From positions 9,916,618-9,980,617 of the forward strand of contig OZ037772.1 in the NCBI GenBank assembly GCA_964035545.1: a stretch of 64,000 nucleotides of DNA, given 5' to 3'. The notes beneath the pieces are model-generated. The model worked only from the letters and a program-made list of their open reading frames with translations, ran no database searches and had not been told where the DNA came from. Within the stretch, counting starts at the first letter, position 1; each line of letters opens with the position of its first letter. Positions 1-48,267 of this stretch are shown in pieces. This stretch comes from Bugula neritina (taxonomy: Eukaryota > Animalia > Bryozoa). The position numbers and the translations under genes were made by a program.

Positions 1-520
1 GTATGCGTTGGTAAGGTTATATATACGCAGGTAAGTCTATATATACGCAGGTAAGTCTATATATACGCAGGTAAGTCTATATATACGCAGGTAAGTTTAT
101 ATATACGCAGGTAAGTCTATATATACTGAGGTAAGTCTATATATACACAGGTAAGTCTATATATACGCAGGTAAGTCTATATATACGCAGGTAAGTCTAT
201 ATATATGCAGGTAACTCTATATATACGCATGTAAGTCTATATATACGCAGGTAAGTCTATGTATACGCAGGTAAGTCTATATATACGCAGGTAAGTCTAT
301 ATATACGCAGGTAAGTCTATATATATGCAGGTAACTCTATATATACGCAGGTAACTCACTATATATGCAGGTAACTCTATATATACGCAGGTAAGTCTAT
401 ATATACGTAGGTAAGTCTATATATACGCAGGTAAGTATTTTTTTGTAGGTGAGTCTATATATATACACAGGTAATTTAATGTATACACAGGTAAGTATAT
501 TTACATGCAGGTAAATTAAT
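1..520 (+). repeat. 20-bp minisatellite (ATATACGCAG GTAAGTCTAT)n, roughly 25 units, degenerating at the right end; lies in the intron upstream of Bcl-2-like gene 1 exon 2
   Basis: Directly visible 20-nt periodicity; most units contain CAG|GTAAGT or CAG|GTAACT. Confidence 0.95.
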
Positions 521-714
521 TTAAGATTTTTGGTTAAACTTGTACCTTTTAATAATTTGACTACTGCATATAACTTACTATATGATGTAAATATATTTCT
601 AATTTTTTGATTTTATAATAATTGAACTTTAACAACTTAGAATATTTTTATAACTTCGAAGTTCTATCCTTTAACTGTTTTTCTAATCTCTCATGTGTTT
701 GAACATGATTGTAG

Positions 715-3122
715 AATCTTCTATGAGAATGTCAATCTCATTTATGAAGACCGAATCAAAGCTTTAGAGGAGGAAATTGACGAGATGGAAAACAAGAAGC
801 AGCTAGAGAAGATGGCCGTGAGCTTATTGGACATCAGTAAGCTATTCCATGAATAACTAACTAACATTTAGCTGCAGTAGTAGATAAATTGAAATAGCTT
901 ATGTTTTTTTTAGATTTTGTTATATAACTTTTGGTTTGGGGTGGTGAAGGGTTAAAATTATTTTGAGAACACAACTTCTTTTGCTTTATACGAAACACAA
1001 GCTTTTCTCAAGTTCTCCTTTAGTGCACCTTTACTTCTAACTATATACTGATATCACCTATGGTGTTCATATTACAAATGTGCCCTATTTTATCAAGATT
1101 TTGTCAAAGAACTTCTATTTCATCTATAAAATGTTTGGTACCTATATAGCTAAAACAGTATAAAAATAAAGTTTTACAGAAAAATTATCGTTTGCCCTTT
1201 ATTATGGAGTAAAAACCCAAATCTGATTGCACAGAATTTTAGTAGATAGTATACTACATTTATTAGATATTAATTATAGTTTATTCATATTTTAAATTGT
1301 TTTATTCTAGTTGTTTGGTAGCAAAATTCCTAATATATATACTTTTCAGTAGTGATATTTTAGTTATAAAAGGAGTTTGTTGATTGAAGAAGTATAGTAG
1401 ATAGGCCAGTGGAGTTCAGAGAGCTGGGTGGGATGTAGCGTTGTAATTACCCAGTGGTCTCTGTGGTGTAGCGGTTGGCACACTTGCTTGCAAGCCAGAT
1501 GTCAGACCTGGTTGGAATCTCAGGGGGGTCACTTAGTTTTCGAGTTTGATATATAATATTATGTTTGTAGAAATAGAGCAATATGACAGCGCGTGGTGGA
1601 ACGACCTAATAGACAGGTCTGTATGCAAGGTCTGCAGTCCTCGGTCGCTGGATCAAACCAGAGAGTATTTCAATCGCATGTTCAATCAGCTGCTATTTAA
1701 TCCAAACCATCTCCCATCTTTCAAGATAAAAAATGTAAGTTCAATCAGTCTTCTCTACATTCTATATGACTCTAGTAGGAATCTTGTAATAGTGGTTAGA
1801 TCGTTTGCCTGGTAAACACTAAGTCATGGGTTCGAACATGAAAAAATTCTATTGGTGATGTTAGGAAGAGCATCCAGTCATAATTCCTCCTGTAGCTCTT
1901 CTAAATAAGCCCTTAGTCTACTTGAACTAAAACCCTTTCCATCAAGGTTTTTTCACAAAGATATAGCGCCTATAAACTTGAGTAACAGTAATTTTAAAAG
2001 TATGTGTGCCAGTATCAAAACTAATACTTACTTATAGTCTTTTATTATCAACTAGGAACTGGGAAAGAGCAATTTGCAACGTATAGCAACTTCATACAAA
2101 GCAAATTAGAATTGCATCAAGCTAAAACCTATAGTCAGTGTGTTGGACAAGCAAAGTTTTCTAATTTTACTTTAACATGGCTGTGTTTAGAAATAAGACT
2201 TTATCAATAAGTGCAAGTAGTTTTAAAAGTTTCAATTTTTTTTTTCAGTTTAGGAAAAACGATGTTATAATTTAATTCAGATAAAATTATTCACAAAATT
2301 TTTGACCATGCCAGTTTTATCAAAAAATTGATATATTATGCAACAGTTGTTGAATAATTTGCTCAGTACTTTCCTATCTACAGCTATTTTGTAATAATTA
2401 TGGTGTATTATGCTATAACTTTCTAAAATCTTGTAGGTACTGATGTTTTCCACTGACTTGGCCATCAAGGTTCTAGCTGCCGGATATCCTAAACGGGCGA
2501 TCAAACTGCTCAACATACTCATTCACAACTTTACTGAGCCCAAAGCTAGAATCTTAATTCGAGAGACTGGGGGTTGGGTGAGTTTAATAGGTTTTAAAAA
2601 AACTTGATCATTTAAATTCATTCAAACACACCTAAGTTTTTAATAGAAATTACTTGAAATTAGAAGCTGGTTATTATTCAATGTTGAGAGTTATCTGCCC
2701 TGTTATGGGACCTTATCAGTTTTGGTAATGCTATAGCTGAATCGTTTGCAGTCAAGCAAAAGTGTTAAGCAATCCCTAAACCTTAACTTTTTTATCTGTC
2801 AATTGCCATATTAATATCCAAAGTCATCTAAAAACTAAAACTAAGCAAAGGTTTGAACAGATTGAGTTCTATAATATTTGGCTTGTCTTTGAATATATTT
2901 TGTTTAAATTATATATTGTTTAAATTGTAAATGAAAATATAAATGCATGTCCATGTTTTATGTTTACAGCAAGTTATCTCAGACTTCAACCCAGATGATC
3001 AACTGAGCAACAGGGACAGGTTGATTCGAACTTGTGGGCTGTTTGTCATACCCACTCTAGTGGCTACAGGAATCATGGGTCTGGTAGTCCTCTATGGAAA
3101 TCAGAATAAACAGTTTATTTAA
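715..3122 (+). CDS. Bcl-2 family protein, divergent paralogue 1 (5'-partial; first coding exon expected left of the window)
   Basis: GT-AG exons 715-836 (IFYENVNLIYEDRIKALEEEIDEMENKKQLEKMAVSLLDI), 1571-1734, 2437-2577 (VLMFSTDLAIKVLAAGYPKRAIKLLNILIHNFTEPKARILIRETGGW) and 2970-3122 (hydrophobic tail CGLFVIPTLVATGIMGLVVLYG, stop TAA). Phases are compatible. BH2 GGW followed by a phase-0 intron and a C-terminal TM segment is the Bcl-2 family pattern. Confidence 0.85.
1448..1535 (+). mobile_element. tRNA-derived SINE-like head, family B
   Basis: GTGGTGTAGCGGTTGGCACACTTGCTTGCAAGCCAG...GGTTGGAATCTC has an A-box and a degenerate B-box; near-match at 12793-12885. Confidence 0.6.
1775..1980 (+). mobile_element. 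tRNA-derived SINE, family A (core GGTGATGTTAGGAAGAGCATCCAGTCATAA)
   Basis: tRNA-like head (TAGTGGTTAG...GGGTTCGAAC) plus a conserved core; related copies at 8195, 9345, 20768 and (minus strand) 40912. Confidence 0.75.
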
Positions 3123-3847
3123 TCAGTACCAGCTTCTTGATGTCTATTATTGCTGTCAGGAAATTAGAGATTAATTTCATCTTAAATAGAACTTTTCTTT
3201 ACTATAGATATTCAATCTGTTCTAGCTTGCATCTGTTTTTCACTTTCATTGTCTGAGCTTGGCTCTGTAAATAAGTCTTTTAGCATATTTGTGGTCAAGA
3301 GTTGACTCAGCCTAAAATTATAAAACGTTTCAATGTATTTCATTCAGTGCTAATAAAATATGTGTAAACTGAAACAATAGCCTTTTAGTTTCTATGCTTT
3401 ATGGATAAATATTTATAGCCACTTCTTCATGAGAATTGAATCACATAAATTGATAAAATACATTATCTGCTGTACAACAATAGCCATTGATATGTAGTCA
3501 ATTTCAATATGATCAGTAATGTTTGAAATTGCATAGTATTTTCACTCATAATTTGTACAATTGAAGATGAAAATAAAGTTTTAGACACAGGTCATCTAGA
3601 ATCATCATCTTTAAAAACATTCAGCATCAATGAAAAAACCTTTTTGAAAAAAGCTTAAACCAATTAGCATACCCATAATGCTTTTGTAAGATATATCATG
3701 AATAATAGCTGAGGCGGCTTTCTCGTAAAATGGAAAGCAATGTCTAGCGATTGGCAAAAATAGCATGCTATTACAATTAGTGCTGGAAGTTTAGTAATTC
3801 ATAAAGAAACAGTGGATAAAATAGTGTTCTGCTGCTGTTAGTTGAAT

Positions 3848-6213
<2,366 letters not shown>

Positions 6214-7210
6214 AAACAAATTGTTCATTTTTCCTCACTTTGTATGTTTGACAGTCAGGATTATACACACTGCATATAAGTTTAATCTTCAAATCTAAGA
6301 CATCAATCTCAGTTTTTTTCAGCTTTTGATAACTTCTTTCAGCCTGTACAGTCTTTCTCTTGTTAGATTTAAATTACCATGTAGCAAATAAAAATGTTTA
6401 ATTTCTTTCTTTCTAATTAAAACTAATAAAATAAATATTCGTTTTGAATTGATTCTTCATAACAATTAACATGCAGTTTAATGACTTTTTTATATTTTAG
6501 GCGATTTATTTTGCCTCTTATACAAATTAAAAATTTAAGCTCAAAAAAGGAAAGCGTTTATAATTTTGATAATATAAAATGATTTTATTGCACGAGTTTA
6601 GAAATATTATAACAGCAGTGGATGTTTAGCTGCTTTGTTATAAATCATGTTTTTACAAGCTCATCTCTAATAATTGTGTGCTCATATTTAACTAAAGTTT
6701 ATAGAAAGTTATGTGGTTTAATTGATATAGAATCCGTTTACTATCACAACTTAAATGTGTTTCCAACACTTCTAGCACATGACAAACACTTCTAGCACAT
6801 GACAAACACTTTTAGCAACAAATTACTTTACTTCTAAGTTAGTAAAAGCTACGATATATTTAACAAAAAATTTAGTAACAGTTTGATAATTTTGTAGATT
6901 GAAGACTTCATTTAGTTAATTGATTTTATGTAAGACTAACAATTGGAAATTATTAGCATAATAATGTTTTTTTCAGAATGCACAGAATAAGAGTAGCTTT
7001 ATATAGTTTTATTAGACATCAAAAGTAAATTTATGATTAATAGAAATTCAATATGTCAAACAAAAGTTGAAAAAAAGTAAATATGTGAGGGGAGACAACT
7101 TATATAAATACAAGAGCTGAATTCTTATTGCCATGTTGTTTCATAATTTTAAAAAACTAATTCGCTCTGCTTACAAAATGTTCTATTTTTTATACTTTCT
7201 GGAATAGATT

Positions 7211-9765
7211 TTAACCCTGTGTCCATTTTCTAAATAAATTAAAGGCACGGGCTAAATATAAAGAGCCAAAACAGGTTACAGTAAAAAATAGAATGAGAGC
7301 TTTTAGACCGAGATCTGTGTGCCAGCGCTCCTCTTCCTCGGGGTCGCGGGGGTCTTGAAGCATTTCTAGCAGGTAAGAAAGGTAACCCTAAAATTAAAAT
7401 TATATGAGAATCATATTAATAAGAATTACGTTAGATTATAGATGCACAAGTTATTTTAGTAAAAGATGATAATAAAAGACATCTTCAAAAATAATAAAAC
7501 TCATCGTCATGGTAACTATAACTCATTACACTAAAGTCAAGTTAAGGGGATTTCTATTGACCAATCAATCAATTACGCTTGTTCGTTCATCATCTTTGGT
7601 GGGTGAACCCAACGAAGAAGATTTTATATGAACTCTTTCAAATTTGATCGCACGCTTGTGTTTTTGTGTAAAATAGACAATTTCATGTGATTCTCACAAC
7701 CGTGTGGCCGGGACTTTATACAAATGTTGTTAGCAATGAATATCACTCACCCATTTCCTTTTTCTATGCAGGAAATACTCCACCTGTGAGTCCTCTAAAA
7801 ACTCACATAGCCAAACGATGAGTTTAGCTGCCCTCTTAGATGAGTCCTCCCTTATTGCTTGTATTGCCAGGTCTGCCGTGATTACAGTAATCTATAAAAC
7901 ATCACACGCAGCAAAGTCATGTATACGGGTCATTTTATGCAACTTTTTACAATCTTGATGTCTTTAGCTTGTAGCTATTTTTCACAATTTAGCTGCTAAG
8001 GTATGTGGCAATCAACAAATATATGTTTACATATACAACTATAAATATTTACATGGATTTTTATATTTTAATTTATTTTTATTGTGGTTAGAATCAGCAA
8101 ATAATTTACTTAAGTAGCAAACATTCGTGATTTTTGGTCAAACTGATTGTTGGCTTTAATTTGCTGATGTTCAAAACTAAATATGAAAGGACTTGGAGCA
8201 TTTGCCTAGTAAACATGAAGTCATGGGTTCGAACCCCGACAAAGGCCGTTTGTTATGTTAGGAAGAGCGTCCAGTCGTAATTTCTCCTAGGCCTCATTTA
8301 AATATGTCCTTAGCCCGATTTAACAAAAACCTTTTCTATCAAGGGTTTTCTTACAGAGATGTCAATTATAAACTTTTTCAAGTGAGAACTATGAAAACAG
8401 TAGTTTTATTATATAATATAAGTATAATATAATTTTGCTCTAATTAAAATAATCATAAATCCAATTAAAACTGTGCAAATATAAGCATATATTCTTAGAA
8501 TTTTCTAATAATACCCAGATTTAATAGCTCAAAATCTTACCTTATATAGGGCTAGCCAGATATCCCGCTCATGTTGAAATGTGAGCTCACAGATCCTGAA
8601 GAAACATTGATAGGCCAGGGGTTTTGGCACATTTGGAGCTACTAGGCTGCACATATTCATGAAGTCTTCTATCTCCTCTGGGGTAGCTCCTATCGTCAGT
8701 CCTAATGTAGGGGTAGCAGCAAAATAGGAATTTAGTAATTTGTTGATAAACACAAGTAATATTATTTGATATAAAATCTTAAAAAGCCTTGCATCTTGGT
8801 TAGAATGCTGTCATTTTTATTCAACATGTCAAATTCTAGGTCTTAAATTTTTTAATGTGTTAATTTAAACTCTTCTGACCTTTGAAGAGTTACCTTTACG
8901 TAGCATTTGCACATGCAGTGTTATAGGAACTCAAGTTTTATAGCCTTAGAGACTTACTGTATGCAATAATTTTAGCCACAGCTTGTCTTAGAAAGATACT
9001 GTCTTCTAACTCTGAAGCTAGTTTTTGAATTTTTGGATAATCATTTGGATTCAATCCAATTGACTTGAGTCTACAATATAACAGCTTATTAAAGATAGTA
9101 TAGGAATAATATAGAAAACACGAATTTTAATACTAAAAAATTTCTTGTTAAAAAAACAGTTTTCAGTAAATATATAAGAAAAAATAAAATGAAAAATTGT
9201 TTCTCAATTTTGTTGGCTGATGCAGCTGTTAGAGAAAGCATGCTAGCCTTATAAACACAGACTAAGTATTTTAAGCTCAGGTAATATTAGGAAGAGCACT
9301 TAGTCATAATTACTCCTCTATTACATTGAAAAGCATTAATTGGAGCAGCTGTGTCTAGTATTTGCTTAGTAAATTCCTGAGGTCATGGGTTTGATCCCCA
9401 GTAAAAACCATTGGTGATGTTAGGAAGAGCATCCAGTCATAATTGCTTCTGTGCCTCATTCCAATAAGTCTTAGCCCAATTTAACATAAACTTTTTCTAT
9501 CAGGGGTTTCTCACAGGGATAGTGACTATAGACTTGCATAAGTTTAGTTACATTGAAAAACATTCCTAAGCCCAATTTTAAAAAATAAATTTTGTAAAAT
9601 TCTCACAATGATAATACTAACGAAAGTGTAGATAAAAGAGAATGATCATGCATGAGAAAATATGCATTTTATCTAAAAACTTAGTAAAAAATTGCAGGTA
9701 AACTTCTGGTCAGCTTACCTGTGCATGAAGTAAGCTATAATCACTTGTTTACTCTGTAGAGGCAT
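7211..9765 (-). CDS. Bcl-2 family protein, divergent paralogue 3
   Basis: Minus-strand exons 9765-9719 (MPLQSKQVIIAYFMHR), 9070-8958, 8701-8541, 7891-7751 (ITVITADLAIQAIREDSSKRAAKLIVWLCEFLEDSQVEYFLHRKRKW) and 7387-7211 (TM ALILFFTVTCFGSLYLA, ends AFNLFRKWTQG*). Exon sizes 47/113/161/141 match the other paralogues; BH2 GGW is changed to RKW. Confidence 0.85.
8195..8375 (+). mobile_element. SINE family A copy (intron 3 of paralogue 3)
   Basis: Aligns by eye with 1775-1980 (GCCTAGTAAAC..GAAGTCATGGGTTCGAACCC...ATGTTAGGAAGAGCGTCCAGTCGTAATT). Confidence 0.75.
9345..9540 (+). mobile_element. SINE family A copy (intron 1 of paralogue 3)
   Basis: Same head, core and 3' end (CACAGGGATAGTGACTATAGACTTGC). 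Confidence 0.75.
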
Positions 9766-11202
9766 CTTGTTTGCTGTCCACAATTGAAGACTTGATATAA
9801 TAAACTTGGTGAGTCTTCAACCTTCACTTTACTAGTGACTCTGCCCTCTGTCTTCCACAAGCAGTGCTATAGTTTGCACTATACAAGCTTAAATACAATT
9901 CTTTTAAAGAAAGCTAAAGCTTTCTTGAGACTTTTAGTATAAGCTTGAAAAAAAAGCTAATTAATTTACTTTATGAAATGTTAATGTTACCTGTTTTGTT
10001 TTTCAACTTTTTACTGCACTCAATTTCAAGTCACTTACAAATTGTATATCATGATATAACAAATTACTCATGCTTTCTGCTCTAATGACATTCTCCTAGT
10101 CAGTTAGAATGCAAAAGTTGTTTTTAATAGATCATTTAATTATTATAAGGTACTCTTTCAGCTATAATATATAAAGAAATGTTAACTCTTTTTTCCTGGG
10201 TATAATAATATACTTGATAGAAACTTGAGTATCTATCAAAGCCTATCTAAAAAGATTGCATGGGTAAAATAAAGCCCCAGAGTTTGAGTAACTCTCTAGA
10301 AACCTAAGTCTATGACCATGGCTAGAGAGCCCAATCAAGGAATGTCATTGCTGAGCATAAAACTTAGTACATTAAACTTTATACATCAGCTTTTTCATGA
10401 GTTGTGCTCTCATAGCCTTATGCAAAGTTATATTACAGCTGCTCTGGTCTATCAAGCATGTTAGTTTGTGAATTATTGCAATACAATTGGAACAAAATAA
10501 AAACAAGAATGCAGAATGTAATTAGAACTTATTTGACCAAAATCGTTCAATTACTATAATATTATTATATCTGTCTCAAAAAGGAATGCTTCTTTATTCT
10601 TGTTAACTTAGACCTATTTAATTGACTGGCTGGCATAGGATTTATGCAACCTTTATAAAGTTTAAGATTTTGCTATACCAAATCTGCATTTTATAGCAAG
10701 TTATATGTGACATTTTTATAGTACTATGCTAATTTATGCCACTCACTTGTTTATATTGAAGAAAAGTTTACAAAGTATCATGTAAGGTTTAAAAAAATTA
10801 GATGAAGAACAGATAGTTCCTAATTTAAATAAAAAATCAACTGTCAGCTGTTTAAATTACTAATAAGGATCTGTAATTCAAAGGGTGCTTTTATTAAACT
10901 TATATATTTTAATTGGAATAAAACTTCATTTAAATTTTTTACATTTATTCATTTATTATATTAATGTGTTACATGGTTTACAACCAACAAATTTGTTAAT
11001 ATAGTTCTCAAAAAAGAGCTAACAATATGATAAACTGTGTATATAGCAATGGACATCTCGTTAGATTTACCAAAAAGTTTAACATACAATAAACAAAAAT
11101 AAATACAAAATTATTTCTCTCTAATGTTTACAAAAATATATGCACTGGCAAAGAGGAGAGTCATGTAAATGATTGCCTTTTATAGAATTTTGTGAATTGG
11201 CA

Positions 11203-14956: not shown

Positions 14957-17944
14957 ATGCCTTTACAAACTAATCAAGTGCTCACTGCCTATTTACTTGA
15001 GAGGTGAGAATAGTTTTAACTCTTTATTATCTGTACGGAAAACTGACACAATGTTAATTGAATTAAAACAATCAAACACATGTATAGATGTTTATTTATT
15101 ATCTTTTAGTTGCTTTATGTCTAATGTTACACTTTTTATAAACAGTTATGATTAACTTCTACAACTTGCATGAATTCATATTCATAGTAAAAACAGCTGA
15201 CTGGAAGAAGTCTTCAAAGTTATTCTTGTTACCATTTGTGCAAAAAACAATTATGATTGAATATTTATTTGAGCAACATTATAACTGCTTTTGTTAGATT
15301 AGGAAACAATTTCCTTTCCAATACAAGATTTAATTCACTGTAATTCTGTAGGTTAAGCGATGTTGGACTAAACCCAGAGTACTATCCACGCTTCCAGAGG
15401 TTATCTGCCAAAGTTGAGGACACCTACGAGCTGAGAGAAGTCGTGAGAAAGTTGAAAACATCAAGTAGGTTCTTAATTTACTAGCATTCGATGTGACATT
15501 CGTTTACTATAGCATTCACTGTGACATCCATTTTCTATGCATTCACTGTAAGATTCACTCTGACATTCACTCTGACATTCATTTACTATGCATTCACTGT
15601 AAGATTCACTGTAACATTCACTGTGATATTCACTGTGACATTAGTTTACTATAGTATTCACTAATATGACATTTACTGCGTTTCTATAAGCCTGAAATTT
15701 TGATTGAATTTTCTCTCTGAGGTCTAAAAACAGTTGCATGGAAAGAAACTACAATCATAAGTTTATGCAAACTACAACAACAAATTTATCCATTCAAACA
15801 TCAATTTGAAATAGAGAAGCATACACTGCATGTATTTCCATGACGTTATATTCAAATGAATGCCCTTAGATTAATTGCGGTTTGTGGTTTGCATTAACTT
15901 ATATAGTTGAGTTTCATTTGATGTAACTACTTTTATTAGCCATTATTGCATTATGCAATAAAAAAATTCATGGCATAATGCAATAATGGATATTGAAAAG
16001 TTGTATAGCAATGCATCATAACAATATATAAATTCTTCTATTTTACAATATATCTAGGACCTGCTGTGGTTGGCGCAACGTATTACATCAACTTGGACGA
16101 CTCCACAGAAGTAGTTTTTAAATCTGAATGGTATGCCCGGTTGTATGTTAGGAGAATGTGCAATCACGTCTTTACACCTGAACAGTATACCTGGAAGAAC
16201 CTGATCAAGGTGAAGGTCAAATTATCATCCTCTTGTTATTTAAACAACGAGTAAACCAAGAAATTGTGTTTAAATGTTGACTTTGAGTCATTTGATGTTA
16301 TTATGACCAATCTATGTTAAAATATGAATCAAAATTGTTAACATGAATATAATATAATCCTTATAAGAGAACAAGACAAAGCAGAGATAGATGAAGATTA
16401 AATAATTATATTATACTCATTACGTACTTGTAAAAGCATTTTAAAATATGTTTGCTAATTATTTCTATGTTTATAAGTAGACTGTGTAATGACAGACATG
16501 TTGAATTATAATTTTTGTAGCTACATTAATATAATATATTTAGTGTGGAATTTACCCAGGCAGAGGTCTGTGGTTCGAATCCCGGTGGGGGCAATTATTT
16601 TACATTATATACACATTGAAAAGTTGGTGCTAAAAGATTTTATTAATTAAATACTTGTTAATAATTTTATTTAAACCTCCAAATTATTAATGTGTTCAAA
16701 AATAACATGAACTACTGTTTACTCAACAAAATTCTAAATAGGTGTGTTTCTTTGTATACCACTCAATGTCTTAACATTAATCTTTAGTGTTCTTAAATTT
16801 GGTCACTTGTTTCAGACTTTATATAAATTATCAAACTGAAAAACAAAATTTAAAAACGCATTTGTCTTAACTTATGTATTTAACTTTCAGGCTGTGCTTT
16901 TTGTTACGGATGTGGGAGTGAAAGCTCTTGAGAATGGCAAGCCACAAACAACTATAGCCTTGATAAACGCTCTTGCCTCTTTTCTAAACAAACGTAGGGC
17001 TAAGGAAATACTTGCCAATGCTGGAGGATGGGTGAGTATATTTAAAATTATTATATATTTATTCAATTTCATGCTTTCATATAATATATTATATCTCTCC
17101 TGCTTTTACATATTCTAGCCCTTAACTGTATTTGTATGTGAAATGCATTTGAACAACTTTTTTTCTAACTCACATCAAAAACTTTGGGTTCTACTCAATA
17201 TTTGGGCTACAAAGATGTTTTTCCAAGCAAAAAAAATCTAGTTTTTACCTGAATTTTGGAAAGCTTTACCATTATTAAAGTAAAAATTTTCTGGGTCAAG
17301 TTTGCTTTATTAAAGTTCTCATTGTGCGTTTTCTGTAAACTAAATACACTTCAATTATAGTACATTTGCATGATAGTTTAAACAACTTGATTTAAGAGTG
17401 GAAAAATGTTATATTGAAATCTTCTTAAATAAAAAACTATTAAATTCCAACTTTAATCGCAGCAAATTGAATATTTTTATATTGAAACACTATCTTGTGT
17501 GATTATACAAAAAACTCAAGTTTTCCATTTCTAATTGAAAATGAATTAACAAAAAATTAAAAAGAAGTTATTCTACAAACTGTTAAAAAGCCCTGCCCAG
17601 TTTACTGACATTTTTTCTTTAGTTTTACCTTTCAACTTTACCTGTTTTGCAAAACAGGTAGACGCCAATTTAATATTAGAATAAAAATTGACCTATAGTA
17701 TTGTTATATTAACAATCAAGTGCTGCATTTTTATACTAAAATTAGAAATTTATAATCACAATTTTTTTTCTTTGTATTGCATTTTTTTTCGAATTGTTAG
17801 GAGAGCCTTCCTATCATTGAACACGAGCAAGAAGAAGAAAGCTTGCCAGACTTCGTATATCGAATGTCACTCGCCATCTTTGTGTGGACAGCAACCATGG
17901 TTGTAGTGTCCAAGTTAGTTCAATTCTACAGAGAAAAATCCTAA
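14957..17944 (+). CDS. Bcl-2 family protein, divergent paralogue 5
   Basis: Exons 14957-15003 (MPLQTNQVLTAYLLER), 15352-15464, 16058-16209 (ends VFTPEQYTWKNLIK, BH1-like), 16891-17031 (AVLFVTDVGVKALENGKPQTTIALINALASFLNKRRAKEILANAGGW) and 17801-17944 (TM MSLAIFVWTATMVVVSKLV, stop TAA). Confidence 0.88.
15485..15680 (+). repeat. degenerate ~11-12-bp tandem repeat (CATTCACTGTGA-like) in intron 2 of paralogue 5
   Basis: Direct inspection. Confidence 0.8.
16540..16602 (+). mobile_element. SINE-like head fragment (family B-like)
   Basis: B-box GGTTCGAATCCC followed by GGTGGGGGCAATTATTTT; similar endings at ~52668-52750 and ~56684-56763. Confidence 0.45.
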
Positions 17945-19772
17945 GTTCCTTGTTAAAATGAATGTAATTATTAGCAATGTTGCTCTTATGTAAATATATA
18001 CTAGTTTTTGTGATATTTTTGTCCAAATCTCTTATGCACTTTGACATGAAATGGAAATAAACTTAAATAAAAACTTTCAACTGCTCTTTCTGCTCATAAT
18101 ATATAAAGGTCATTTGCTGACAAATCTGTTACACCTATAACAATAATTCCTTGCTGAAATAAAATTATACAAAAAGAAAGTTGCACAAATTTAAACATTC
18201 GACACATGCATTGATAAATTTATCTACCATTTAAAATTTAATTGCTTGAAAAGCTTAAATATGCTGTTTTATTTCACCAGGTGTGAAAGTTATTATCAGA
18301 CAATTTTTAGGCAATTTATTTATATTTTCTAGCATAGCCTGTAATAAATCTTGAAACATAGAAATTTTATTTGGAAGTTGTATTTTCATACTTTTTTCTT
18401 ATAACTCTTCCAGCTTTTTTAAGAAAAATTCTGCTAACAGTCATTCAAATATAAAACATTTTTTGTTGCAAAAAATATTAGTTTATTATGTTTTATCTAT
18501 TATAAATTTAAAATTCTTGAAGCACTCCTTGACTCAAAAATAAAATAGTTATTTATTTAAATTATGTAGCTAATTTTGTAAGCAAAGTTATATGGAGTAA
18601 TTATACATGGGTTCCTTGTAAAGTTATATTTAAACTAAAATTAAAAAAGCATCAACTGTGATGTTTGTTCAAAATTAGTATATGTAAATTTATTCGTGGT
18701 TTTTAAAGTTATTTTAGTGACTTTCAAAGAGTTGCTGTGTAAATAAATTTAAAACTATCAAACAAAGATATTTTATTCAAAAACTGAATACAATTTGAGT
18801 AAACCGCTTTAATTTTCATACCTATAATTATACTTGAATTTGTGTGACCAAATAAATTAATCAAAGCTCTACAAAGGCATAAAAAAAAAAGATAGTGGAA
18901 AGAAAGTTGAAAACAATTGATGTAATTTCCAACACTTGTAGTTTGGTCAACTCCTGGTTAAAACTTTCATACCTGAAAAGCTCTATTTGCTCAACATTAT
19001 ACCTACCATATCAATCTTGTAATGATACAACACGAATTGAAATATTCTTGAGTGCAATTTATTAGGCTATATACATAGGCATGCAACTTTAATTTTATTT
19101 GGTTATGCTAAAAAATAAATACTGAATTCTATTTACTAGTTTTAATATATTTTTATGTATTTTTATTTAGCAACTATTTTGTTATTTAAACTGATTATAA
19201 AGAACTTCTGGAGCTTGGCTTTACACTTCTGATGGTTGAAAACAATTTTTCCAGCTGTTTTTTTTTTTACTTTGGGTCAAAAGATATTATTTCAAAGTTG
19301 GAACATCTGTAATTTGTAAGGAGGGAAAATCAAACAGCTAAAATGCTGGTGAAAACAGTCAGAGTAATGTTGCACTGCTAGGTAATTGCTCTGCCGTCTT
19401 ACAAAATATTCATAGCTGAATCAAGCTGTAATTATGAGCTAAATAGGTTTTTAATGCTGCATTTTCTAAACTGTTACATTAGAAAGTTCTAGAAAAAATG
19501 CTATGCTAGCTCAAAGTTTACAATAGACTCCAACAGAGCTTTTATGCACAGATGCAGATGCAGGAATAAAAATAGATTTTGTTTAGCTAAAAGAAAAGCT
19601 CGCACTTACGACACTGGGGGAACACTTTAATAGCATAAAATATCTTTTCTAAACTTGGTGAAAAAGGTAGTAAATAAAAAATACGAAGATCAACATCTCT
19701 TGACATCTTAGAAGATTATCAGGAAACAAGAAATACAGAGAACAAGAAGAGTAGTATCTGGACGTCTACAAA

Positions 19773-22700
19773 ATGCCGATTGAATCAAAGGATGTCATAA
19801 TTGCTTGTCTTTTAAAGAGGTAGGTTTGTGAAGAAGTTTCAAGTCACAGTTAGATGAATGATAACATATTCTTACTCATATTTAACTTTATAAGAACAAT
19901 TGTATATTGTTTTGTTTTAAGTTGATTAATTTCTATGCTTGGCATTGCAACAGCAACATGTCTACAGGAGTTATGCTCCCAACATAGACTTGGGGGAGAA
20001 ATTATTGCTATTAATTGTACTATTTATAGACTTTACCTTTAGATCAATCATCTGATGAGGCAGAAGGTGTTGTTTTTTTTTGCAGTTCATTTATATGAAT
20101 TTAATAAGCTACAACTACCCCCCCCTTTTCCCCCTTAAATTTCTTCTTTTTATCTACAGATTTGGTGATTAGTTTTTTAATATTCTAGAATTGAACAATT
20201 GAAGATTAATTTAGCGGACTACCCAGAAATCCAAGCATTGGCCACAAGTACCCGGAATACCAGACTGGTGGGGAGAATCGCAGAGGAGTTTAATTCACCT
20301 AGTAAGGACCTGTCAAGAAGTAAGTAAATCTTTACCAGTAAGTAAATGTCCAAAAGTAAGTAAATCTTTAACAGTAAGAACCTGTCCAGAAGTAAGTAAA
20401 CCCTTAACAGTAAGTAACTGTCCAGAAGTAGGTAACTGTCCAACAGTAAGTAACTCTTTAACAGCAAGTAAAAGTACATCAAGTAAGTCACTGCTTAAGA
20501 ATAAGTAACAGTTTAACAGCTTAAGTAGCTGGTTTATAATGAATAGCTGTTTAACACCAAGTCACTAAGTCACTGTCCTCAACAGTAAGCCACCGTTCAA
20601 CATTGAGTAACTATTCACTAATAAGTAACTGTACATCAAGTAAGTAACTGCTTATCTAAAAATTTATTGTCTTGTTTCTTTCCGGTTTTTCTAAAAGATG
20701 GTAAAATATTTAATTAAAATTGAGCTCATTGTGTAATTCAATTAGCAAAAAATATTTCCATGTTCATAGTAGGGAGCAGACATGGTCTAGGGTTTAGAGC
20801 GTTTGCCTAGTAAACTCGAAGTCATGGGTTTGAACCCGACAAAGGCCATTGGGTGATGTTAGGAAAAGTATCCAGTCAAAATTGCTCCTGTACCTCATGT
20901 AAATAAGTCTATAGCCCGGTTTAACAAAAATTCTTTTATCAGGGGTTTCTCACAGGTTTGGTGACTATTAACTTGCACGAGTTTTTCTCACTACCCAAAC
21001 AGGACAAAGCAGGAATAAGTGAAAGAATGTTTCCATGTTTATAGGAGAAGCTCTGCTAGGGTCAGGAAGTATTTTGAGTAGGCAAGTTGCCGTGTGTAGC
21101 AGACATATTCCGACAGTGAGGTTTTCTGTGGCCATTAGAAGAGCCATCAATTTCTTAGCAGAGAGGGTGTTCAACAATCACCAATACTACTCCTGGGATA
21201 ATATCAACATTGTAAGTTCTTTAGTGATAGTGGTTTTAGCAGTTTTAGTATAATTGCATTTTTAGCCAATTATATAGAGTACGTGACTAAAATTAATATT
21301 TAAATCTTGTTTAATGGTACCTAGTTCAGTGCAATGAAATAATCTCAAAGTTGATTGCTACTTTGAATAGTTAAATAGTTTTGTTTATAAATGTGGGTAC
21401 AATAAAAAATTTGGTACATCAACTTAGTTAATTTTATGTTGTTGCATGACTTTTGTAGTATTAATAGCTTAGTTATTAAAATTCATTTAATTTATGTTAC
21501 ATTAAATTGGTATGCAAATTAAATTTAAAATAAATAAAGAAGTATTTCAAAATGTAAGTGAAAATATGTTTTTTTTATATTTGTTAGGTCGATCCTCATA
21601 AAACACCTGTAATTTAAGATATAACTATATATAGATATATGCATATATTATTTTTATCTCTATTTAGTATATAGTAACGGCTACAGAAATAGCTATTGAG
21701 GTCTTGAGTAGAGATACAGAGCAAAGAGTAATTCTAGTGATGCAGAGGATAGCAGACTACCTTAATAACAGTGAAGCTCGGGAATTCATAAGACTGTCCG
21801 GTGGTTGGGTAAGTGTGTAGTTATACAGAGAAAGTACATCATAATTATACTAATGTATTATGAGGTATATCATATATACTACTGTATTATGAATTACACT
21901 ATATACACTACGGTATTATGAAGTACACCATATATTATACTACTGTATTATGAGGTATATAATATATACTACTGTATTATGAAGCATTATTTTTATATTT
22001 TCTTTGCTAATCACCATCTTAAATCATCTGTATGTACAGAGAATGTTTCAGCTGTATCTCAAATAAAACGCAGTCAGTCCTATATGAGACAAATTCAACC
22101 CTTGCATGTATATAGCTGTACAATCTTACATTTAGTTCTCTTGTTGCCTAATCAATCATCATTGAGATAATCAATTGAACTGCGCACTGTTTTCCATATA
22201 CCTGATTGATACCAATGTTAGTCACTTCTTGTAATGTATATGTGTGTGCTTACAGGAGAGCTATCCTTATGTAACTGGCAACCAAGAACAACATTCTGTG
22301 GAAGCGGCAGCAGCTACTGAAGGGGCTGCAACTGCCAGACGTTCTCCAACTGTCAAAGATTCTGCACTTGTTCAGGATTCTGCAGCTGCCCATGATGCTG
22401 CAGTTGCTAGGCAATATGCAGCTGCTATAAAGCAATCTGCAGCTGCTAAACAATCTGCAGTTGCTAGAAAATCTACCGTTGCTAAGAAACCCTCAGCTGC
22501 TAAAAATTCTGCAGCTGCTAAAGAATCTGCAGTTGCTAAAAATTCTGCAGTTTCGGAGAAATCTGCAGCTGGTAAAGATTCTGCATTTGCTCAGGAATCT
22601 GCAACTGTTAAAGATTCTAAAGTTGCTCAGCAAAATACAGTTGCTAAGCAATCTATGGTTGCTAAGAAATCTGCAGTTGCTAAGAAATCTGCAGCTGCTA

Positions 22701-22921
22701 AAGACCCTGCAGTTTTGAAGAAATCTGCAGTGCCTAGAAGCTCCAGAGTAGCTGAAAGCAGTGAAGCCGATACAATGCCTACAGCTGGTCAATACTTTGA
22801 AGCTACTCAAACTGCCTCAGAAGTAACCGATGCGGCACTATTTGTCGTAGCTGCAGCTGCTTTAGGAATTATTGCGTTGTTTAGAATACGTTCTTATTAT
22901 GATAGATGGTCAAGATCATGA
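19773..22921 (+). CDS. Bcl-2 family protein, divergent paralogue 6, with a long Ala/Lys/Ser hexapeptide-repeat insert between BH2 and the TM anchor
   Basis: Exons 19773-19819 (MPIESKDVIIACLLKR), 20189-20301, 21045-21211 (ends VFNNHQYYSWDNINI, BH1-like), 21668-21808 (ends AREFIRLSGGW) and 22256-22921 (SAVAKx repeats, then TM AALFVVAAAALGIIALF, RIRSYYDRWSRS*). Confidence 0.88.
20302..20650 (+). repeat. 18-bp minisatellite built on A|GTAAGT, starting at the exon-2 donor of paralogue 6
   Basis: GT donor-like motifs at 20302, 20320, 20338, 20356, 20374, 20392, 20410, 20428 and 20446 (exact 18-nt spacing), then degenerating. Confidence 0.88.
20768..20975 (+). mobile_element. SINE family A copy (intron 2 of paralogue 6)
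   Basis: GGGAGCAGACATGGTCTAGGGTTTAGAGCGTTTGCCTAGTAAAC...GGGTTTGAACCC...GGTGATGTTAGGAAAAGTATCCAGTC. Confidence 0.75.
21835..21985 (+). repeat. ~30-bp degenerate tandem repeat (ATACTACTGTATTATGAGGTATATC-like) in intron 4 of paralogue 6
   Basis: About five imperfect units visible. Confidence 0.8.
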
Positions 22922-22998
22922 TTCAACTTGTATATCTAAACATGTTTTGTTTTTCTCTCACAATTTTTTTTCCATCAAACTCTCATAAAGAGTATGTT

Positions 22999-23300
22999 TA
23001 ATTTTTGCAATCTTTACCATTTGGTGCAATAGTTAATTTTCAATTTTTTGGCAGAATATACAAATAAAAATTTATTACTTAAATATTATTACCATGTCAA
23101 TAATTATATGTACAATTATAGAAACACTGCAACATAGCATTATATTATATTAATTTAATTTTTGCAATCTTTACCATTTGGTGCAATATAGTTAATATTC
23201 AATTTCTTGGCAGAATACAAATAAAGAATTATTACTTAAATATTATTATACCAATATTATTTTATTTGTACAATTATAAAGACATTGCAACATGGCCACT
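22999..23300 (+). repeat. ~150-bp direct duplication in the presumptive 3' UTR of paralogue 6
   Basis: TAATTTTTGCAATCTTTACCATTTGGTGCAATA...GGCAGAATA..CAAATAAA occurs at ~22999 and ~23156. Confidence 0.85.
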
Positions 23301-23553
23301 ATAACATATTAGCATCAAGGCAGAATTAACTATAAGCTATCATTTTGTAGCTTCATATGTATGTTATTAGTCTAAATCAGGCAAGCTAGCTAACTAAAAT
23401 GGTTTCTCTGGAATTGCAGTTAAATATTTCTTGTGATTTTTAAAATTTAAGTGATGAAGCCATATTATAAAGATATATTATGATGTCATCAATAAATGCC
23501 ATCATTGAATTAATTACCTTCATAACTGAAAGTTTGAAAGATCCAAAGATAAG

Positions 23554-26500
23554 ATGGCTGTCACTACCAAAGATGTTGCTATTGCCTACATGATGCAAAG
23601 GTATTATAAAATTTACAACTTAAATGGAACCCTGTTTATTGTTGTAGTATACCATAGTACAAACAACAAAAACTTCTTTATCAGTATCAAATCATATACT
23701 AAAATATCAATTTAATATAAGCAACATTTTTCAAGTTTTGGAAAGGGTTTACATTTATAATATAATTTGGTTAAATTTATATTATTTGTCATTTATATTT
23801 ATATATATAAATATGTTTTTTAGCTTATATTCATATCTATTATATTTGTTATACTTAAATTGTTTACTTATATTTATACTAGAAGCTGCCTATAAAATCG
23901 AAAGATATATGTTTAGTTGATTGGGCAGTTCTAGTATGAAAAGCTAAAACTTTAGAAATTGAGCAAAATAAATAAGTTTAATTCAACAGTAATATTGCAA
24001 AATTAGCCTAAACTTTTATTTTTTAAGCACAAATTTTTGGAAATCTATATATTGAATCTTAGAATTTGGTAAATTTATATTGTATTATCCAAAACAATCT
24101 GGTGCTTAAAATAGTGCAGTATGCAGGTTTAACTTTTGACTGATGTTTTCAATATTTTTGCCTGTGTCCATCTATTATGCGCCAAAAACCTGTGATACCT
24201 TTAAATAAAGAAGTTATGTAACAAGTTTTTTTAATAAATTATAAAGATAACGCAGCCACAGATGACAAAAACATATTTTTATAAACAAAGTGTAAGCGCT
24301 CCTTCAATAATTTCAATTTGCACCCTAAGCCCAAATCCACTAGCAACTTTCTTTCTAAATATAATGTAAATTGTATTTTATGAGAAACTTTTGTTTACAG
24401 AGTAAGAGACGTGGGGTTTAGTCCATGTGGATACCCTGAACTGCAGGTGCTTGCAGGTGAAATGAACGACAGCTGTCAACTAAGACAGGTTGTTGCCAAA
24501 CTGAATTCAGTCAGTAAGTGAATTTAACCTTTAAGCTCTTTTTGACCTTTTGACCTTTTGAACCTACACATTGCTCACTTTAATCTAAAATTTCTAAAAT
24601 TATTTAATTTAGAAGGTAGAGAGGCCATTTATTATTGTATCTAATACTAAGTAAAGTCAACTTCATTTTCGTGTTATATGAAAAACAATTTGTTAAGATA
24701 GTCAATAGACATTATACTATTTTACAAAACCATAATTAAAAAGATTTAATATGTTCAGCTGCATGGCAATAGATAAAAGAAAAAGTTATAAGCCAACTAA
24801 ATTATAATGCATTGTTGTAAGGACTTATTCAATAATTTTATTGCTTTTTTCAAAATTTGCCTAATGTTTTTTACTAAATACACCAATTACACTCCATGAG
24901 TCACTAAAATTTTGAACACTAAAAATATGTTTTCGGAACTTATAACAATGAATACATCATTAGCCCATGATAGTATTACAATATCTTTTTGTTATATCAT
25001 ATCAAAATGTGCAATTAATATTGGTAATATTTTGTTATGTTAGAGTATTTTATAATTACATTCTTATACATAAAACTTACAATATTTAATATTGTAATAT
25101 TATATTAGGACTCTTGCATTACATACTATATAATAACTGCGTTCTTATCATATATATTATATAATTATTATTGCATTGTATCAGAACACAATATTGTTTC
25201 ATAATAAAATATGACAAAATACATTATTGCTTTATAATACACAAACAAATTAATAATGACATAATTATACATAATTAAATTGAAAGATTATGTATAAAGA
25301 TAATTTATAATTTGTACTAATTTTTAATATTCTTACAGCAATTTTCACAAGAAAAATTTTTGAGTATTTGTGTTTCAGGAGCAGAGTTGGTTAGTGACAG
25401 AGAATATGGTCAAATAGTGAGTCAGGGTGGTGACAATATGTCTCCCTCTATATCATCATCTGAGGCGGAACGATTCCTTCATATGCTGGGAGACAGCAAC
25501 TTTCTTAACGGAAAGTATAACTGGGGACGTCTAAGCATGGTAAATATAACATTATACTTTTATTAAAATATTGGCAAACAGCCAGAATTATCTCTCTGAC
25601 ACACATATATAACCTTTTACCAGAAGACATTGCATTTCATTAATTAGCGTTTATTGTCAATTACAGGAAAAAAATTTTAAAAATATTATATTTTAGTTTC
25701 AACTACAAGTACTTGGATTCTATCATATTTTTAGCAAATAGTAAAAATAAAAATGTTTTTATCAAAGTTAAATTGTTTTAATGCTATCATGTTTCTTAAA
25801 ATAATACAATATAATTTACGTAAAGTATAAATATGTCACTACATATAATAGTTTAATTATTATTGCAAAAGGCTCAAAAAGTATATACATATGTGTAGCA
25901 GATTTTGCTTACAGCTTCTTGTAAATTATGTAAAAAATGTTTGGTCTTCTTTTAATCCATGAAATATGCAGAAATATTAAACACATTTTTTGATGACCTA
26001 TTAAGATTTTGAGAAGATTTTTCTTGTTCATGAACAAAATATTGTTGCTGTATATTAATTAATATGATTGATTGCATGGTTGTTTTTCACCTAATAAACC
26101 CAATTATTTGTTTCAGTTTATTGTGTACATCACAGACTTGGCTATCCAGGCTCTTAGATGCGGGTGCCCACAAAGGGCAGCCGACATTATATCATGGTTA
26201 GTGTGCTATTTGAACAACCCACTGGCTACACAATTCCTCTGTCAGTCTGGGGGCTGGGTGAGTCATTATTTACTGATTTGCTTCCTGTTTTATATAAAAT
26301 GTTACTTTTATCCAAATTTCTTCAAACTAAATAATTTTCTGTTGGAAAAAATAGAATTAGCACTTTATTTAGTTTTATCATGGTGCAAAGTTCAAACTTA
26401 AAATATTGACAATATTAATGGACATTCTATAGAAATTAATTTATCTTATTTTTACAAAATTTGTATTGTCAAAATGAGATATCATATATTATATACGTAA

Positions 26501-27169
26501 TATATATCATATATATATATAACAATATATCATATATAAACTATACTGATCAACATAGTTTTGAATATTATAATTTGAAAAATAACAATACTATAAAACA
26601 TATCGTATGATTCTCTCTGTTCAATTACTCTAAGGCAGTAATTTTGATTTACTGATTTATACTTCAATATGACGCATAGTCAACTGCTAATTTCTATTTG
26701 AAAAACAATTTTTATATTGAAATGCAAAAATCCCTTAAGTCCAGCTTAGTTATACTAAGACTAAAAAATACAAAAACATATATATATGCCTTTACCATAT
26801 ATCGTAGAGAAGATATGTCAGCACATGGTCTATAACTTATTATAGCATTATATAGAATGTCTTTTTAAATTAATAATCTCTACTAATGTATGTAGGCCTA
26901 TAGCTAAAATAAAATATATGTCAACATATAGCCTTTGCAATGTAGTAGAAAATATATTGTTTCATAGCATAGCCTCTATGTATAGCAGTTAACATTATCA
27001 CTGTATGCTTTTGCAGACCAAAGTCCTGGGAATGGATGCTAATCAAGCTGCTGCACCAAACGTAGAAGGGCTGAGTGACATGATTGTGCGAGACGCTATC
27101 ACTGCTATTGGCTCAGCTGTATCCGCCTTAGCTCAAGCCTACAACTTCTTTAACAGATGTACAAGATAG
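23554..27169 (+). CDS. Bcl-2 family protein, paralogue 7 (most canonical; BH1 NWGR and BH2 GGW intact)
   Basis: Exons 23554-23600 (MAVTTKDVAIAYMMQR), 24401-24513, 25379-25539 (ends NFLNGKYNWGRLSM), 26117-26257 (FIVYITDLAIQALRCGCPQRAADIISWLVCYLNNPLATQFLCQSGGW) and 27017-27169 (ends AITAIGSAVSALAQAYNFFNRCTR*). Confidence 0.92.
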
Positions 27170-47850: not shown

Positions 47851-48267
47851 TGGGTCATTTTACTTAATTTAGTGCATGCTGAAATCTCCAGTTTTTAGCT
47901 ATTTTTCACAATTTAAATGGTAATGAGCATGGATCTTTGCCCAAAACTAGTAAAACACCAATAAATACACCAAAATAATCACGGTTCTTCTTAATTTTGC
48001 ATCATTTCCCATTTTTTTTCTTATTTATTTATCAGGAGTGCTGACCGTTACGAAAAAACTGTAACGGTATGTAACCAAAAGTAGCCGAAAAATTAGGAAA
48101 AAACATGGGAAATGAACCAAAATTAAAAAAAAGTTTAATCATTTAGGTGTAATTATTGGTGTTTTATTAGTTTTGATCAAAAACCTATGTTCATTAGCAG
48201 TTAAATGGTGAAAAATAGCTAAAAACTAAAGATATCCAGTGTGTACTAAATTAAGTAAAATGACCCA
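47851..48267. mobile_element. palindromic MITE (~417 bp) with TA flanks, Tc1/mariner-like
   Basis: TGGGTCATTTTACTTAATTTAGT...ACTAAATTAAGTAAAATGACCCA; arms stay complementary far inward; TA on both sides. Related fragment at ~7925-8000. Confidence 0.82.

What the first reader, a model, noticed from the sequence alone, without database searches (positions are those of the whole stretch)
715..27169. Tandem array of seven highly diverged Bcl-2-family genes with a hypervariable BH1/groove region
Seen: seven genes share exon sizes and phases (exon 1 = 47 nt in all six where visible, exon 4 = 141 nt in all seven) and all have open frames, yet their proteins differ greatly. The BH1 position reads PSFKI, SKWRL, DIWLAL, VDWYTL, YTWKNL, YSWDNI and YNWGRL, and exon 3 (groove helices) is hardly alignable between copies. 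Established: the NWGR Gly/Arg forms the BH3-binding groove, and an intron right after BH2 GGW is a Bcl-2 family hallmark. Inference: a lineage-specific birth-and-death expansion that keeps the fold and membrane anchor while varying the ligand-binding surface. This looks more like an immune-receptor or decoy repertoire than the usual small, dispersed Bcl-2 set. The ORF track misses it because the exons are short.
Basis: partly seen in the sequence, partly recalled or inferred. Interest (0 to 1): 0.85.

Follow-up and report, generated by a model that had tools for sequence, protein, structure and literature searches.

The report
Bryozoan cluster of divergent Bcl-2 genes
Seven intact neighbouring genes of the moss animal Bugula neritina encode very divergent relatives of the cell-death regulator Bcl-2. 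They are old copies, each kept by selection, and not a fast-changing immune-like repertoire.

Summary
Window -76..27169 carries seven intact five-exon genes, five on + and two on -. All 28 introns are GT-AG with the same phases. Exon 1 is 47 nt and exon 4 is 141 nt in all seven. Homology to Bcl-2 rests on profile comparisons: exon 4 against canonical Bcl-2 proteins gives 97.9% probability, E 3.5e-13, ending at GGW and the family's hallmark intron. In trees the seven plus two upstream neighbours form one group (99/95), apart from Bugula's own BAX, BAK and two Bcl-2-like genes. So this is a local expansion, part of a cluster of about 16 genes. This scan had already noted the upstream part on adjoining DNA.

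Exon 3 (helices 3-4 and BH1) is unusually diverged between copies: 13.5% identity against 29% in canonical proteins. Only G7 keeps NWGR. However, orthologues of four of the genes in a related bugulid show strong purifying selection, with pooled dN/dS about 0.12 for exon 3. There are no young or dead copies. The divergence is therefore ancient and now fixed, not an arms race.

Five tails are clearly hydrophobic; those of G4 and G7 are marginal. No RNA data or fold of the joined proteins could be obtained.

The parts
1..3122 (+). G1 (208 aa). Exon 1 lies outside the window at -76..-30 (L005:9924-9970). Exon 2 is 715-836, exon 3 is 1571-1734, exon 4 is 2437-2577, exon 5 is 2970-3122. BH1 position reads PSFKI, BH2 is GGW, and the hydrophobic tail is strong.
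3848..6213 (+). G2 (199 aa). Exons 3848-3894, 4533-4651, 4941-5104, 5693-5833, 6085-6213. BH1 position reads SKWRL, BH2 is GGW. The tail is hydrophobic but poorly conserved in the orthologue. G2 is the sister of G1.
7211..9765 (-). G3 (212 aa). Exons 9765-9719, 9070-8958, 8701-8541, 7891-7751, 7387-7211. BH1 position reads DIWLAL, BH2 has degenerated to RKW, and the tail is hydrophobic.
11203..13255 (-). G4 (208 aa). Exons 13255-13209, 12756-12644, 12412-12255, 11737-11597, 11370-11203. BH1 position reads VDWYTL, BH2 has degenerated to GVN, and the tail is only marginally hydrophobic. G4 is the sister of G3.
14957..17944 (+). G5 (198 aa). Exons 14957-15003, 15352-15464, 16058-16209, 16891-17031, 17801-17944. 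BH1 position reads YTWKNL, BH2 is GGW, and the tail is hydrophobic.
19773..22921 (+). G6 (377 aa). Exons 19773-19819, 20189-20301, 21045-21211, 21668-21808, 22256-22921. BH1 position reads YSWDNI, BH2 is GGW. Exon 5 holds about 17 copies of an 18-nt (six-residue, Ala/Lys/Ser-rich) repeat at 22355-22701, ahead of a strong hydrophobic tail.
23554..27169 (+). G7 (204 aa). Exons 23554-23600, 24401-24513, 25379-25539, 26117-26257, 27017-27169. It is the only copy with both canonical NWGR and GGW. It has the shortest branch in the tree and the best matches in other organisms. Its tail is marginally hydrophobic.

Best explanation
The window holds seven functional, intron-rich genes for proteins of about 200 residues (one of 377) in the Bcl-2 family. 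Each has a BH4-like first helix, a degenerate BH3 helix that lacks the Gly-Asp pair, a BH1 position, a BH2 region and a C-terminal hydrophobic tail.

Origin (shown). The genes arose by old, local duplications. One pair was later inverted. The ancestor was probably G7-like and had the family's intron after GGW plus three further introns. Together with genes just upstream they form one bryozoan-lineage cluster of about 16 genes. This cluster is additional to Bugula's ordinary BAX, BAK and Bcl-2-like genes.

Divergence (shown). After duplication, the exon that builds helices 3-4 and BH1, one wall and the floor of the BH3-binding groove, diverged beyond recognition between copies. The helix-1 and helix-5-to-7 scaffold stayed alike. 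Each copy is now held by purifying selection.

Mechanism (inferred). The proteins sit as tail-anchored proteins on mitochondrial or ER membranes. G7 keeps the Gly-Arg of NWGR and probably binds BH3 helices as pro-survival Bcl-2 proteins do. The six others have re-shaped or disabled grooves, so they probably bind different partners or none through the groove. They would act as specialised, non-redundant regulators and not as killers, because their own BH3 lacks the Asp that killers need.
For: Gene models:
- 28 of 28 introns are GT-AG, phases and exon sizes are identical, and all frames are open.

Homology to Bcl-2:
- Pfam Bcl-2 hits exon 4 of five copies at profile positions 57-100, at 13-20 bits.
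- G7 exon 4 against Bugula's canonical Bcl-2-like ORF gives BLASTP E 1e-7, without gaps, ending at GGW.
- The exon-4 profile against a canonical alignment gives hhalign probability 97.9%, E 3.5e-13.
- Exon 3 and exon 2 align weakly but in the correct order along the canonical alignment.
- Joined models made in the sandbox, against the same alignment, give 98.5%, E 3e-15 over 133 columns from BH4 to BH2.
- The nearest Atlas clusters are all Bcl-2.

One group:
- The tree split has support 99/96, and 99/95 with BAX and BAK added. G1-G2 pair at 99-100 and G3-G4 at 92-94.
- The exon-2 and exon-4 profiles hit only these genes, plus one upstream copy, in the 216-Mb genome.

Selection:
- Collinear contigs from a related species are 75-81% identical in introns and about 90% in exons, with splice sites kept.
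- dN/dS is 0.09 for G2, 0.20 for G3, 0.08 and 0.19 for G5, and 0 and 0.13 for G7.

Tails:
- Kyte-Doolittle 1.8-2.6 in five genes, with basic C-flanks.

Canonical genes elsewhere in the genome.
Against: - No RNA evidence was available.
- No annotated full-length protein of these genes exists among 1.84 billion representatives.
- No exon reaches Pfam's cut-off alone.
- Sequence searches of solved structures gave nothing significant.
- The fold of the joined proteins was not predicted.
- The tails of G4 and G7 are below the usual transmembrane threshold.
- G2's tail is not conserved in the orthologue.
- The trees lack BOK, MCL-1 and BCL2L13 references.
- Every statement about function is inference from motifs.
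Confidence: 0.75

Rival explanations
1. This is the reader's view: a diversifying, immune-receptor-like or decoy repertoire. The groove exon would be under continuing positive selection to track pathogen or symbiont BH3-like effectors.
For: - Exon 3 is far more diverged between copies than in canonical Bcl-2 proteins (13.5% against 29.4%).
- In G2, five of the seven changed residues of exon 3 fall in its last ten codons, at the BH1 position, and include loss of the Trp. My hypergeometric arithmetic gives P of about 0.001, but the test is post hoc.
Against: - Between orthologues, exon 3 has dN/dS of 0.14, 0.17, 0.08 and 0. Pooled, that is about 0.12, against about 0.20 for exon 4 (my arithmetic).
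- There are no recent duplicates, no pseudogenes and no copy-number difference over the compared stretch.
- Gene order is kept in the related species.
Confidence: 0.1
2. Most members are not apoptosis regulators. They would be membrane-anchored Bcl-2-fold proteins with other roles, such as mitophagy receptors like BCL2L13 or ER calcium control through the BH4 helix. Helix 1 would be the shared working surface.
For: - Exon 1 (BH4-like) is the best conserved part: 45% among the copies against 19% among canonical proteins.
- Six of seven copies lack NWGR, and two lack GGW.
- G6 has a long repeat linker between BH2 and the anchor. From memory, that is the build of BCL2L13.
Against: - The exon-4 profile found no BCL2L13 at E up to 0.001 among 1.84 billion proteins.
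- No LC3-interaction motif or partner was tested.
- G7 keeps all the canonical groove residues.
Confidence: 0.25
3. Each copy is a one-to-one orthologue of a different conserved Bcl-2 subfamily, and the copies merely happen to sit side by side.
For: G7 exon 4 alone scores some non-array Bcl-2-like exons of the genome as high as it scores G3 or G2.
Against: - The shared private exon plan (47 / 113 / about 160 / 141 nt) and intron phases.
- One starred group in both trees, apart from Bugula BAX, BAK and Bcl-2-like genes, vertebrate Bcl-2 and the Lingula/springtail group.
- Neighbours in the cluster are also sisters in the tree.
Confidence: 0.03
4. These are decaying pseudogenes, or chance open frames strung together by the reader.
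For: There is no RNA evidence and no public annotation hit.
Against: - Seven complete frames and 28 of 28 consensus splice sites.
- Exons are about 90% identical to the related species against 75-81% for introns, and dN/dS is 0.09-0.20.
Confidence: 0.02

Closest known systems
Multi-motif Bcl-2/Bcl-xL-type proteins (Pfam PF00452), including Bugula's own canonical genes at G000 C4:4.81 Mb and C5:9.34 Mb
   Same: - The order of motifs: BH4-like helix, BH3 position, BH1, BH2, tail.
- The length from BH1 to GGW.
- An intron directly after GGW.
- Gapless alignment of helices 5-7.
   Different: - Three extra introns: inside BH4, after helix 2, and three codons after NWGR.
- About 12 extra residues after the BH3 position.
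- BH3 lacks Gly-Asp.
- NWGR is kept only in G7, and GGW is lost in G3 and G4.
- No exon reaches Pfam's cut-off.
The upstream half of the same cluster (earlier scan note s1-445832; copies Ua and Ub in L005)
   Same: - Same strand of descent.
- Exon 4 is 141 nt, with the same intron positions.
- They fall in the same tree group.
   Different: - Ua has a 53-nt exon 1 and a tail that is not clearly hydrophobic.
- The seven genes here mostly keep a hydrophobic tail.
Lingula anatina 'bcl-2-like protein 1' and springtail Bcl-2-domain proteins (P0019, P0005, P0007, P0015, P0017)
   Same: - They are the best full-length database matches of the exon-4 profile, at 36-39 bits.
- They also lack NWGR (ITKER / ITRER) and have a tail anchor.
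   Different: - They form a separate, well-supported group in both trees.
- They keep a canonical BH3 (LRxxADxF).
BCL2L13 (Bcl-rambo)
   Same: G6 alone has a long repeat-containing spacer between BH2 and the anchor. This resemblance is recalled from memory, not tested.
   Different: - There was no detectable sequence link in the one search able to show it.
- The repeat here is a six-residue Ala/Lys/Ser unit.
Enlarged Bcl-2 sets of cnidarians (11 in Acropora; PMC8998228) and inhibitor-of-apoptosis expansions of bivalves (PMC7831173)
   Same: Lineage-specific enlargement of a cell-death gene family in a sessile marine invertebrate.
   Different: - Here there is one cluster of about 16 very old, very divergent copies with a private exon plan.
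- Bryozoans do not occur in the Bcl-2 surveys I could read.

Membership tests
Bcl-2 family (PF00452) | Significant match to the family profile | tested here: inconclusive
   Exon by exon, exon 4 of five copies scores 13-20 bits at positions 57-100, below the 31.4-bit cut-off. Exon 3 scores nothing. The domain is split over three exons, and the joined protein was not scanned against Pfam.
Bcl-2 family (PF00452) | Profile-profile homology to accepted members | tested here: met
   Exon-4 profile against a canonical alignment: 97.9%, E 3.5e-13. Joined models in the sandbox: 98.5%, E 3e-15 over 133 columns. Pairwise BLASTP: E 1e-7.
Bcl-2 family (PF00452) | BH1 motif NWGR (groove Gly-Arg) | tested here: not met
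   Present only in G7. The other six read SFKI, KWRL, IWLA, DWYT, TWKN and SWDN. The Trp is kept in six of the seven.
Bcl-2 family (PF00452) | BH2 motif GGW | tested here: met
   Five of the seven copies have it. G3 has RKW and G4 has GVN.
Bcl-2 family (PF00452) | BH3 motif L-x3-G-D | tested here: not met
   The aligned position reads LRQ-V/A-V-A-K-L and similar, without Gly-Asp. An earlier helix, L-A-x-E-x-x-D, is a second candidate (not significant).
Bcl-2 family (PF00452) | Intron directly after the Trp of BH2 | tested here: met
   All seven copies have it. So do Bugula's canonical Bcl-2-like genes and BAX.
Bcl-2 family (PF00452) | C-terminal tail anchor | tested here: inconclusive
   Best 19-residue Kyte-Doolittle score is 1.8-2.6 in G1, G2, G3, G5 and G6, but 1.37 in G4 and 1.18 in G7. 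Localisation was not tested.
Bcl-2 family (PF00452) | Eight-helix bundle around a central hairpin | not testable with these tools
BCL2L13 (Bcl-rambo) subfamily | Long extension between BH2 and the anchor | tested here: met
   G6 only: a 221-residue exon 5 with hexapeptide repeats.
BCL2L13 (Bcl-rambo) subfamily | Sequence relationship to BCL2L13 | tested here: inconclusive
   No BCL2L13 appeared among the 11 hits of the exon-4 profile. No BCL2L13 reference sequence was available for a direct comparison.

The most novel reading that the evidence does not exclude
The cluster, including its upstream half, is a set of membrane-anchored Bcl-2-fold 'receptors' with a common scaffold and copy-specific grooves. 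Each groove was fixed long ago for a different ligand. Together they give bryozoans a combinatorial cell-death or organelle-turnover control not seen in other animals. A plausible link is the cyclic degeneration and regrowth of zooid polypides, or the control of cells that house the symbiont.
Probability: 0.15. Interest if true: 0.8.

Novelty: new variant of a known kind. Interest (0 to 1): 0.6.

Why it matters
Animal genomes usually carry a handful to about a dozen Bcl-2-family genes, and these are dispersed. Here one chromosome region of a bryozoan holds about 16, seven of them in this window. All are old and intact, and the four that could be tested are under purifying selection. Six have lost the residues that define BH3 binding but keep the scaffold, and most keep the anchor. 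That is a natural experiment on what a Bcl-2 fold can do apart from canonical BH3 binding. Bryozoans are absent from the published surveys of apoptosis genes that I could read. The work also shows that Pfam-based or ORF-based annotation misses these genes: only one exon of the seven genes appeared in a whole-genome Pfam scan, at E 1.6.

Tried and rejected
- Exon-4 profile and single exons against sequences of solved structures: nothing significant. The top single hit was a Bcl-2-like protein at E 0.13.
- RNA evidence: the run search found one holder, not on record as RNA.
- Two metagenome scans for orthologues, with G7 exon 3 and G6 exon 4, found none.
- The exon-4 alignment against 1.84 billion proteins gave no spliced or annotated product of these genes. 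It gave only genomic open frames from metagenome contigs.
- The BCL2L13 link for the family was considered from memory and is not supported.
- A viral origin was considered and set aside. The genes are intron-rich, carry the host family's intron, and have no viral neighbours.
- The label AY690838 on the metagenome contigs could not be tied to a species through PMC5041132.
- Joined (spliced) proteins were not sent to any search or fold tool. They were built from the window file only inside scripts, for translation, alignment, hhalign and trees.
Full report
**Source of the window**

The window is G000:C8:9916618-9980617 of a 216,009,554-base assembly in 321 sequences, whose fourth sequence is 24.8 Mb. 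These figures match the published Bugula neritina assembly tzBugNeri2.1: 216.00 Mb, 320 scaffolds plus a mitochondrion, N50 24.8 Mb (PMC11480708). Earlier notes of this scan also name Bugula. I take the organism to be this bryozoan, inferred from the matching statistics.

**Gene models**

- A scan for GGW followed by GT found five exon-4 ends on the plus strand. The two minus-strand copies have RKW and GVN at that place.
- Reading the open frames with their splice signals gave seven five-exon models.
- Exon 1 is 47 nt in every gene. It encodes a conserved M-P-L-Q-T-K-x-V-I-I-A-Y-F-type start.
- G1's exon 1 lies 30-76 nt before the window, at L005:9924-9970.
- Exon 4 is 141 nt in all seven.
- All 28 introns are GT-AG with good consensus, in phases 2, 1, 0 and 0.
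- The joined frames give proteins of 208, 199, 212, 208, 198, 377 and 204 residues.
- Pairwise identity is 16-37%.
- The order is G1+, G2+, G3-, G4-, G5+, G6+, G7+. No further copies or fragments occur in the rest of the window.

**Are they Bcl-2 relatives?**

Tested exon by exon, by reference:
- Pfam's Bcl-2 model hits exon 4 of five copies at positions 57-100, but only at 13-20 bits. Exon 3 hits nothing.
- G7 exon 4 aligns without gaps to helices 5-7 and BH2 of Bugula's own canonical Bcl-2-like ORF, ending at GGW, with E 1e-7.
- A profile of the seven exon 4s against an alignment of canonical proteins gives hhalign probability 97.9%, E 3.5e-13.
- Exon 3 (E 0.012) and exon 2 (E 0.21) are not significant alone. 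They fall at the BH1 and BH3 positions in the right order: columns 67-77, 98-120 and 123-167.
- The protein atlas's nearest named clusters are all Bcl-2, at lead level only.

Inside a script, the joined models against the same alignment gave 98.5%, E 3e-15 over 133 columns, from the BH4 helix to BH2.

The joined proteins were not sent to any search or fold tool. The three-dimensional fold is therefore untested.

**One expansion or several subfamilies?**

- Bugula has ordinary dispersed genes elsewhere. There are two Bcl-2/Bcl-xL-like single-exon ORFs over Pfam's cut-off, a BAX (PDB BAX, E 3e-12) and a BAK (only BAK hits).
- In maximum-likelihood trees the seven genes plus two genes just upstream (Ua and Ub in L005) form one split. 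Support is 99/96, and 99/95 once BAX and BAK are added.
- On the other side of that split are these canonical genes, vertebrate Bcl-2 and a Lingula/springtail group.
- G1-G2 (99-100) and G3-G4 (92-94) are sister pairs and also neighbours, as local duplication predicts.
- The seven alone as a group is neither shown nor rejected (AU p 0.47), because Ub falls among them.
- Profiles of exon 2 and exon 4 find only these genes, plus one upstream copy, in the whole genome.
- A single-exon search is less clean. One exon on another chromosome outranks G3 and G2.
- BOK, MCL-1 and BCL2L13 references were not available for the trees.
- The array clearly continues upstream.

**Selection**

The exon-4 profile pulled out genomic open frames from JGI metagenome contigs. 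Four contigs (L006, L007, L015, L016) are collinear with the window: 4471-8692, 15849-17224 and 25428-26538. They are 75-81% identical overall and about 90% in exons, and they keep the splice sites and the G2-G3 arrangement.

| Gene | Exon 2 | Exon 3 | Exon 4 | Exon 5 | Overall |
|---|---|---|---|---|---|
| G2 | 0 | 0.14 | 0.12 | not measured | 0.09 |
| G3 | not covered | 0.17 | 0.36 | 0.14 | 0.20 |
| G5 | not covered | 0.08 | 0.19 | not covered | not calculated |
| G7 | not covered | 0 | 0.13 | not covered | not calculated |

Values are Nei-Gojobori dN/dS. Pooling them by hand gives about 0.12 for exon 3 and about 0.20 for exon 4, at dS 0.24-0.41.

The genes are therefore functional, and exon 3 is not evolving fast now. 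There are two exceptions, both in G2:
- Five of the seven changed residues of its exon 3 sit in the last ten codons, at the BH1 position, and include Trp to Ala.
- Its hydrophobic tail is conserved only in character, not in sequence.

**The 'hypervariable' exon**

- Between copies, exon 3 is truly exceptional: 13.5% identity in a joint alignment, against 29.4% for the same region among eight canonical proteins from several phyla.
- Exons 2 and 4 are as alike as in that canonical set (27.5 against 27.9, and 30.0 against 30.7).
- Exon 1 is much more alike (44.6 against 19.1).
- Exon 5 is equally diverged.
- The pattern is real but ancient. The scaffold was held, and the groove wall was re-made once per copy and then frozen.

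**Motifs**

- Only G7 has both NWGR and GGW.
- G7 has the shortest branch and the best matches to exon-4-like frames of other, unnamed organisms. One of these (L013) shows the same two intron positions around an NWGR exon. G7 is therefore probably closest to the ancestor.
- The BH3 position reads like Bcl-2's L-R-Q-A-G-D but without Gly-Asp.
- Five tails pass the usual hydropathy threshold. G4 and G7 do not.
- G6 carries about 17 six-residue repeats before its anchor.

**Function**

Function is inferred, not shown. The proteins look like tail-anchored Bcl-2-fold proteins. G7 is probably a BH3 binder of the pro-survival type. The others have altered grooves and unknown partners. None is likely to be a BH3-exposing killer.

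**Literature**

Reviews of Bcl-2 evolution and of lophotrochozoan apoptosis contain no bryozoan. Known parallels are the 11 Bcl-2 genes of Acropora and the bivalve IAP expansions.

**Limits**

- No RNA run was offered.
I worked beside those places afterwards.

Noticed in passing
window 39700-46000 (+), 50180-54000 (-), 59500-62000 (-): Three paralogous genes combine protein-kinase exons (Pfam Pkinase, E 8e-10 and 2e-8) with a single-exon domain of about 230 residues that looks like a beta-propeller. Another first-reader note (s1-447189) covers the first of them.
   Followed up: partly
window 6600-6920, between the 3' ends of G2 and G3: This non-coding block is far better conserved against the related species' contigs than the surrounding introns: 44 of 45 bases at 6820-6864, against about 75%. 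It has stops in all frames. It may be a shared 3'-UTR or regulatory element of the convergent genes.
   Followed up: partly
window 1796-1979, 9357-9543, 20794-20974, 40914-41043; L006:4374-4564: A dispersed repeat of about 185 nt lies in introns or spacers of G1, G3 and G6 and near the kinase gene. It is also present in the related species' contig (74-79% identity).
   Followed up: no
window 47852-48266: One stretch of the related species' contig (L006:4632-5030) matches this place in both orientations (70-72%). The place is therefore a palindromic or inverted-repeat element of about 400 nt.
   Followed up: no
window 11940-12240 (G4 intron 3) and 5850-6080 (G2 intron 4): Long compound microsatellites stay open in several frames and produce the long spurious ORFs in the ORF list. 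They are CACTCA-type units in G4 intron 3 and GT/GC-rich units in G2 intron 4.
   Followed up: no
L013:171-533 and 1365-1565 (ENA metagenome contig): An unnamed organism (36% GC) has an exon ending NWGRIFM|GT. It is followed by an exon-4-like frame ending GGW|GT that is closest to G7. The private intron three codons after NWGR is therefore older than Bugula.
   Followed up: partly
G000 C4:13462737-13464277 and C6:15566325-15568713 (L010, L011): These are Bugula's BAX and BAK orthologues. The BAK gene's intron inside the helix 5-6 region is an open, tandem-repeat-filled frame that makes a spurious 348-residue ORF.
   Followed up: partly
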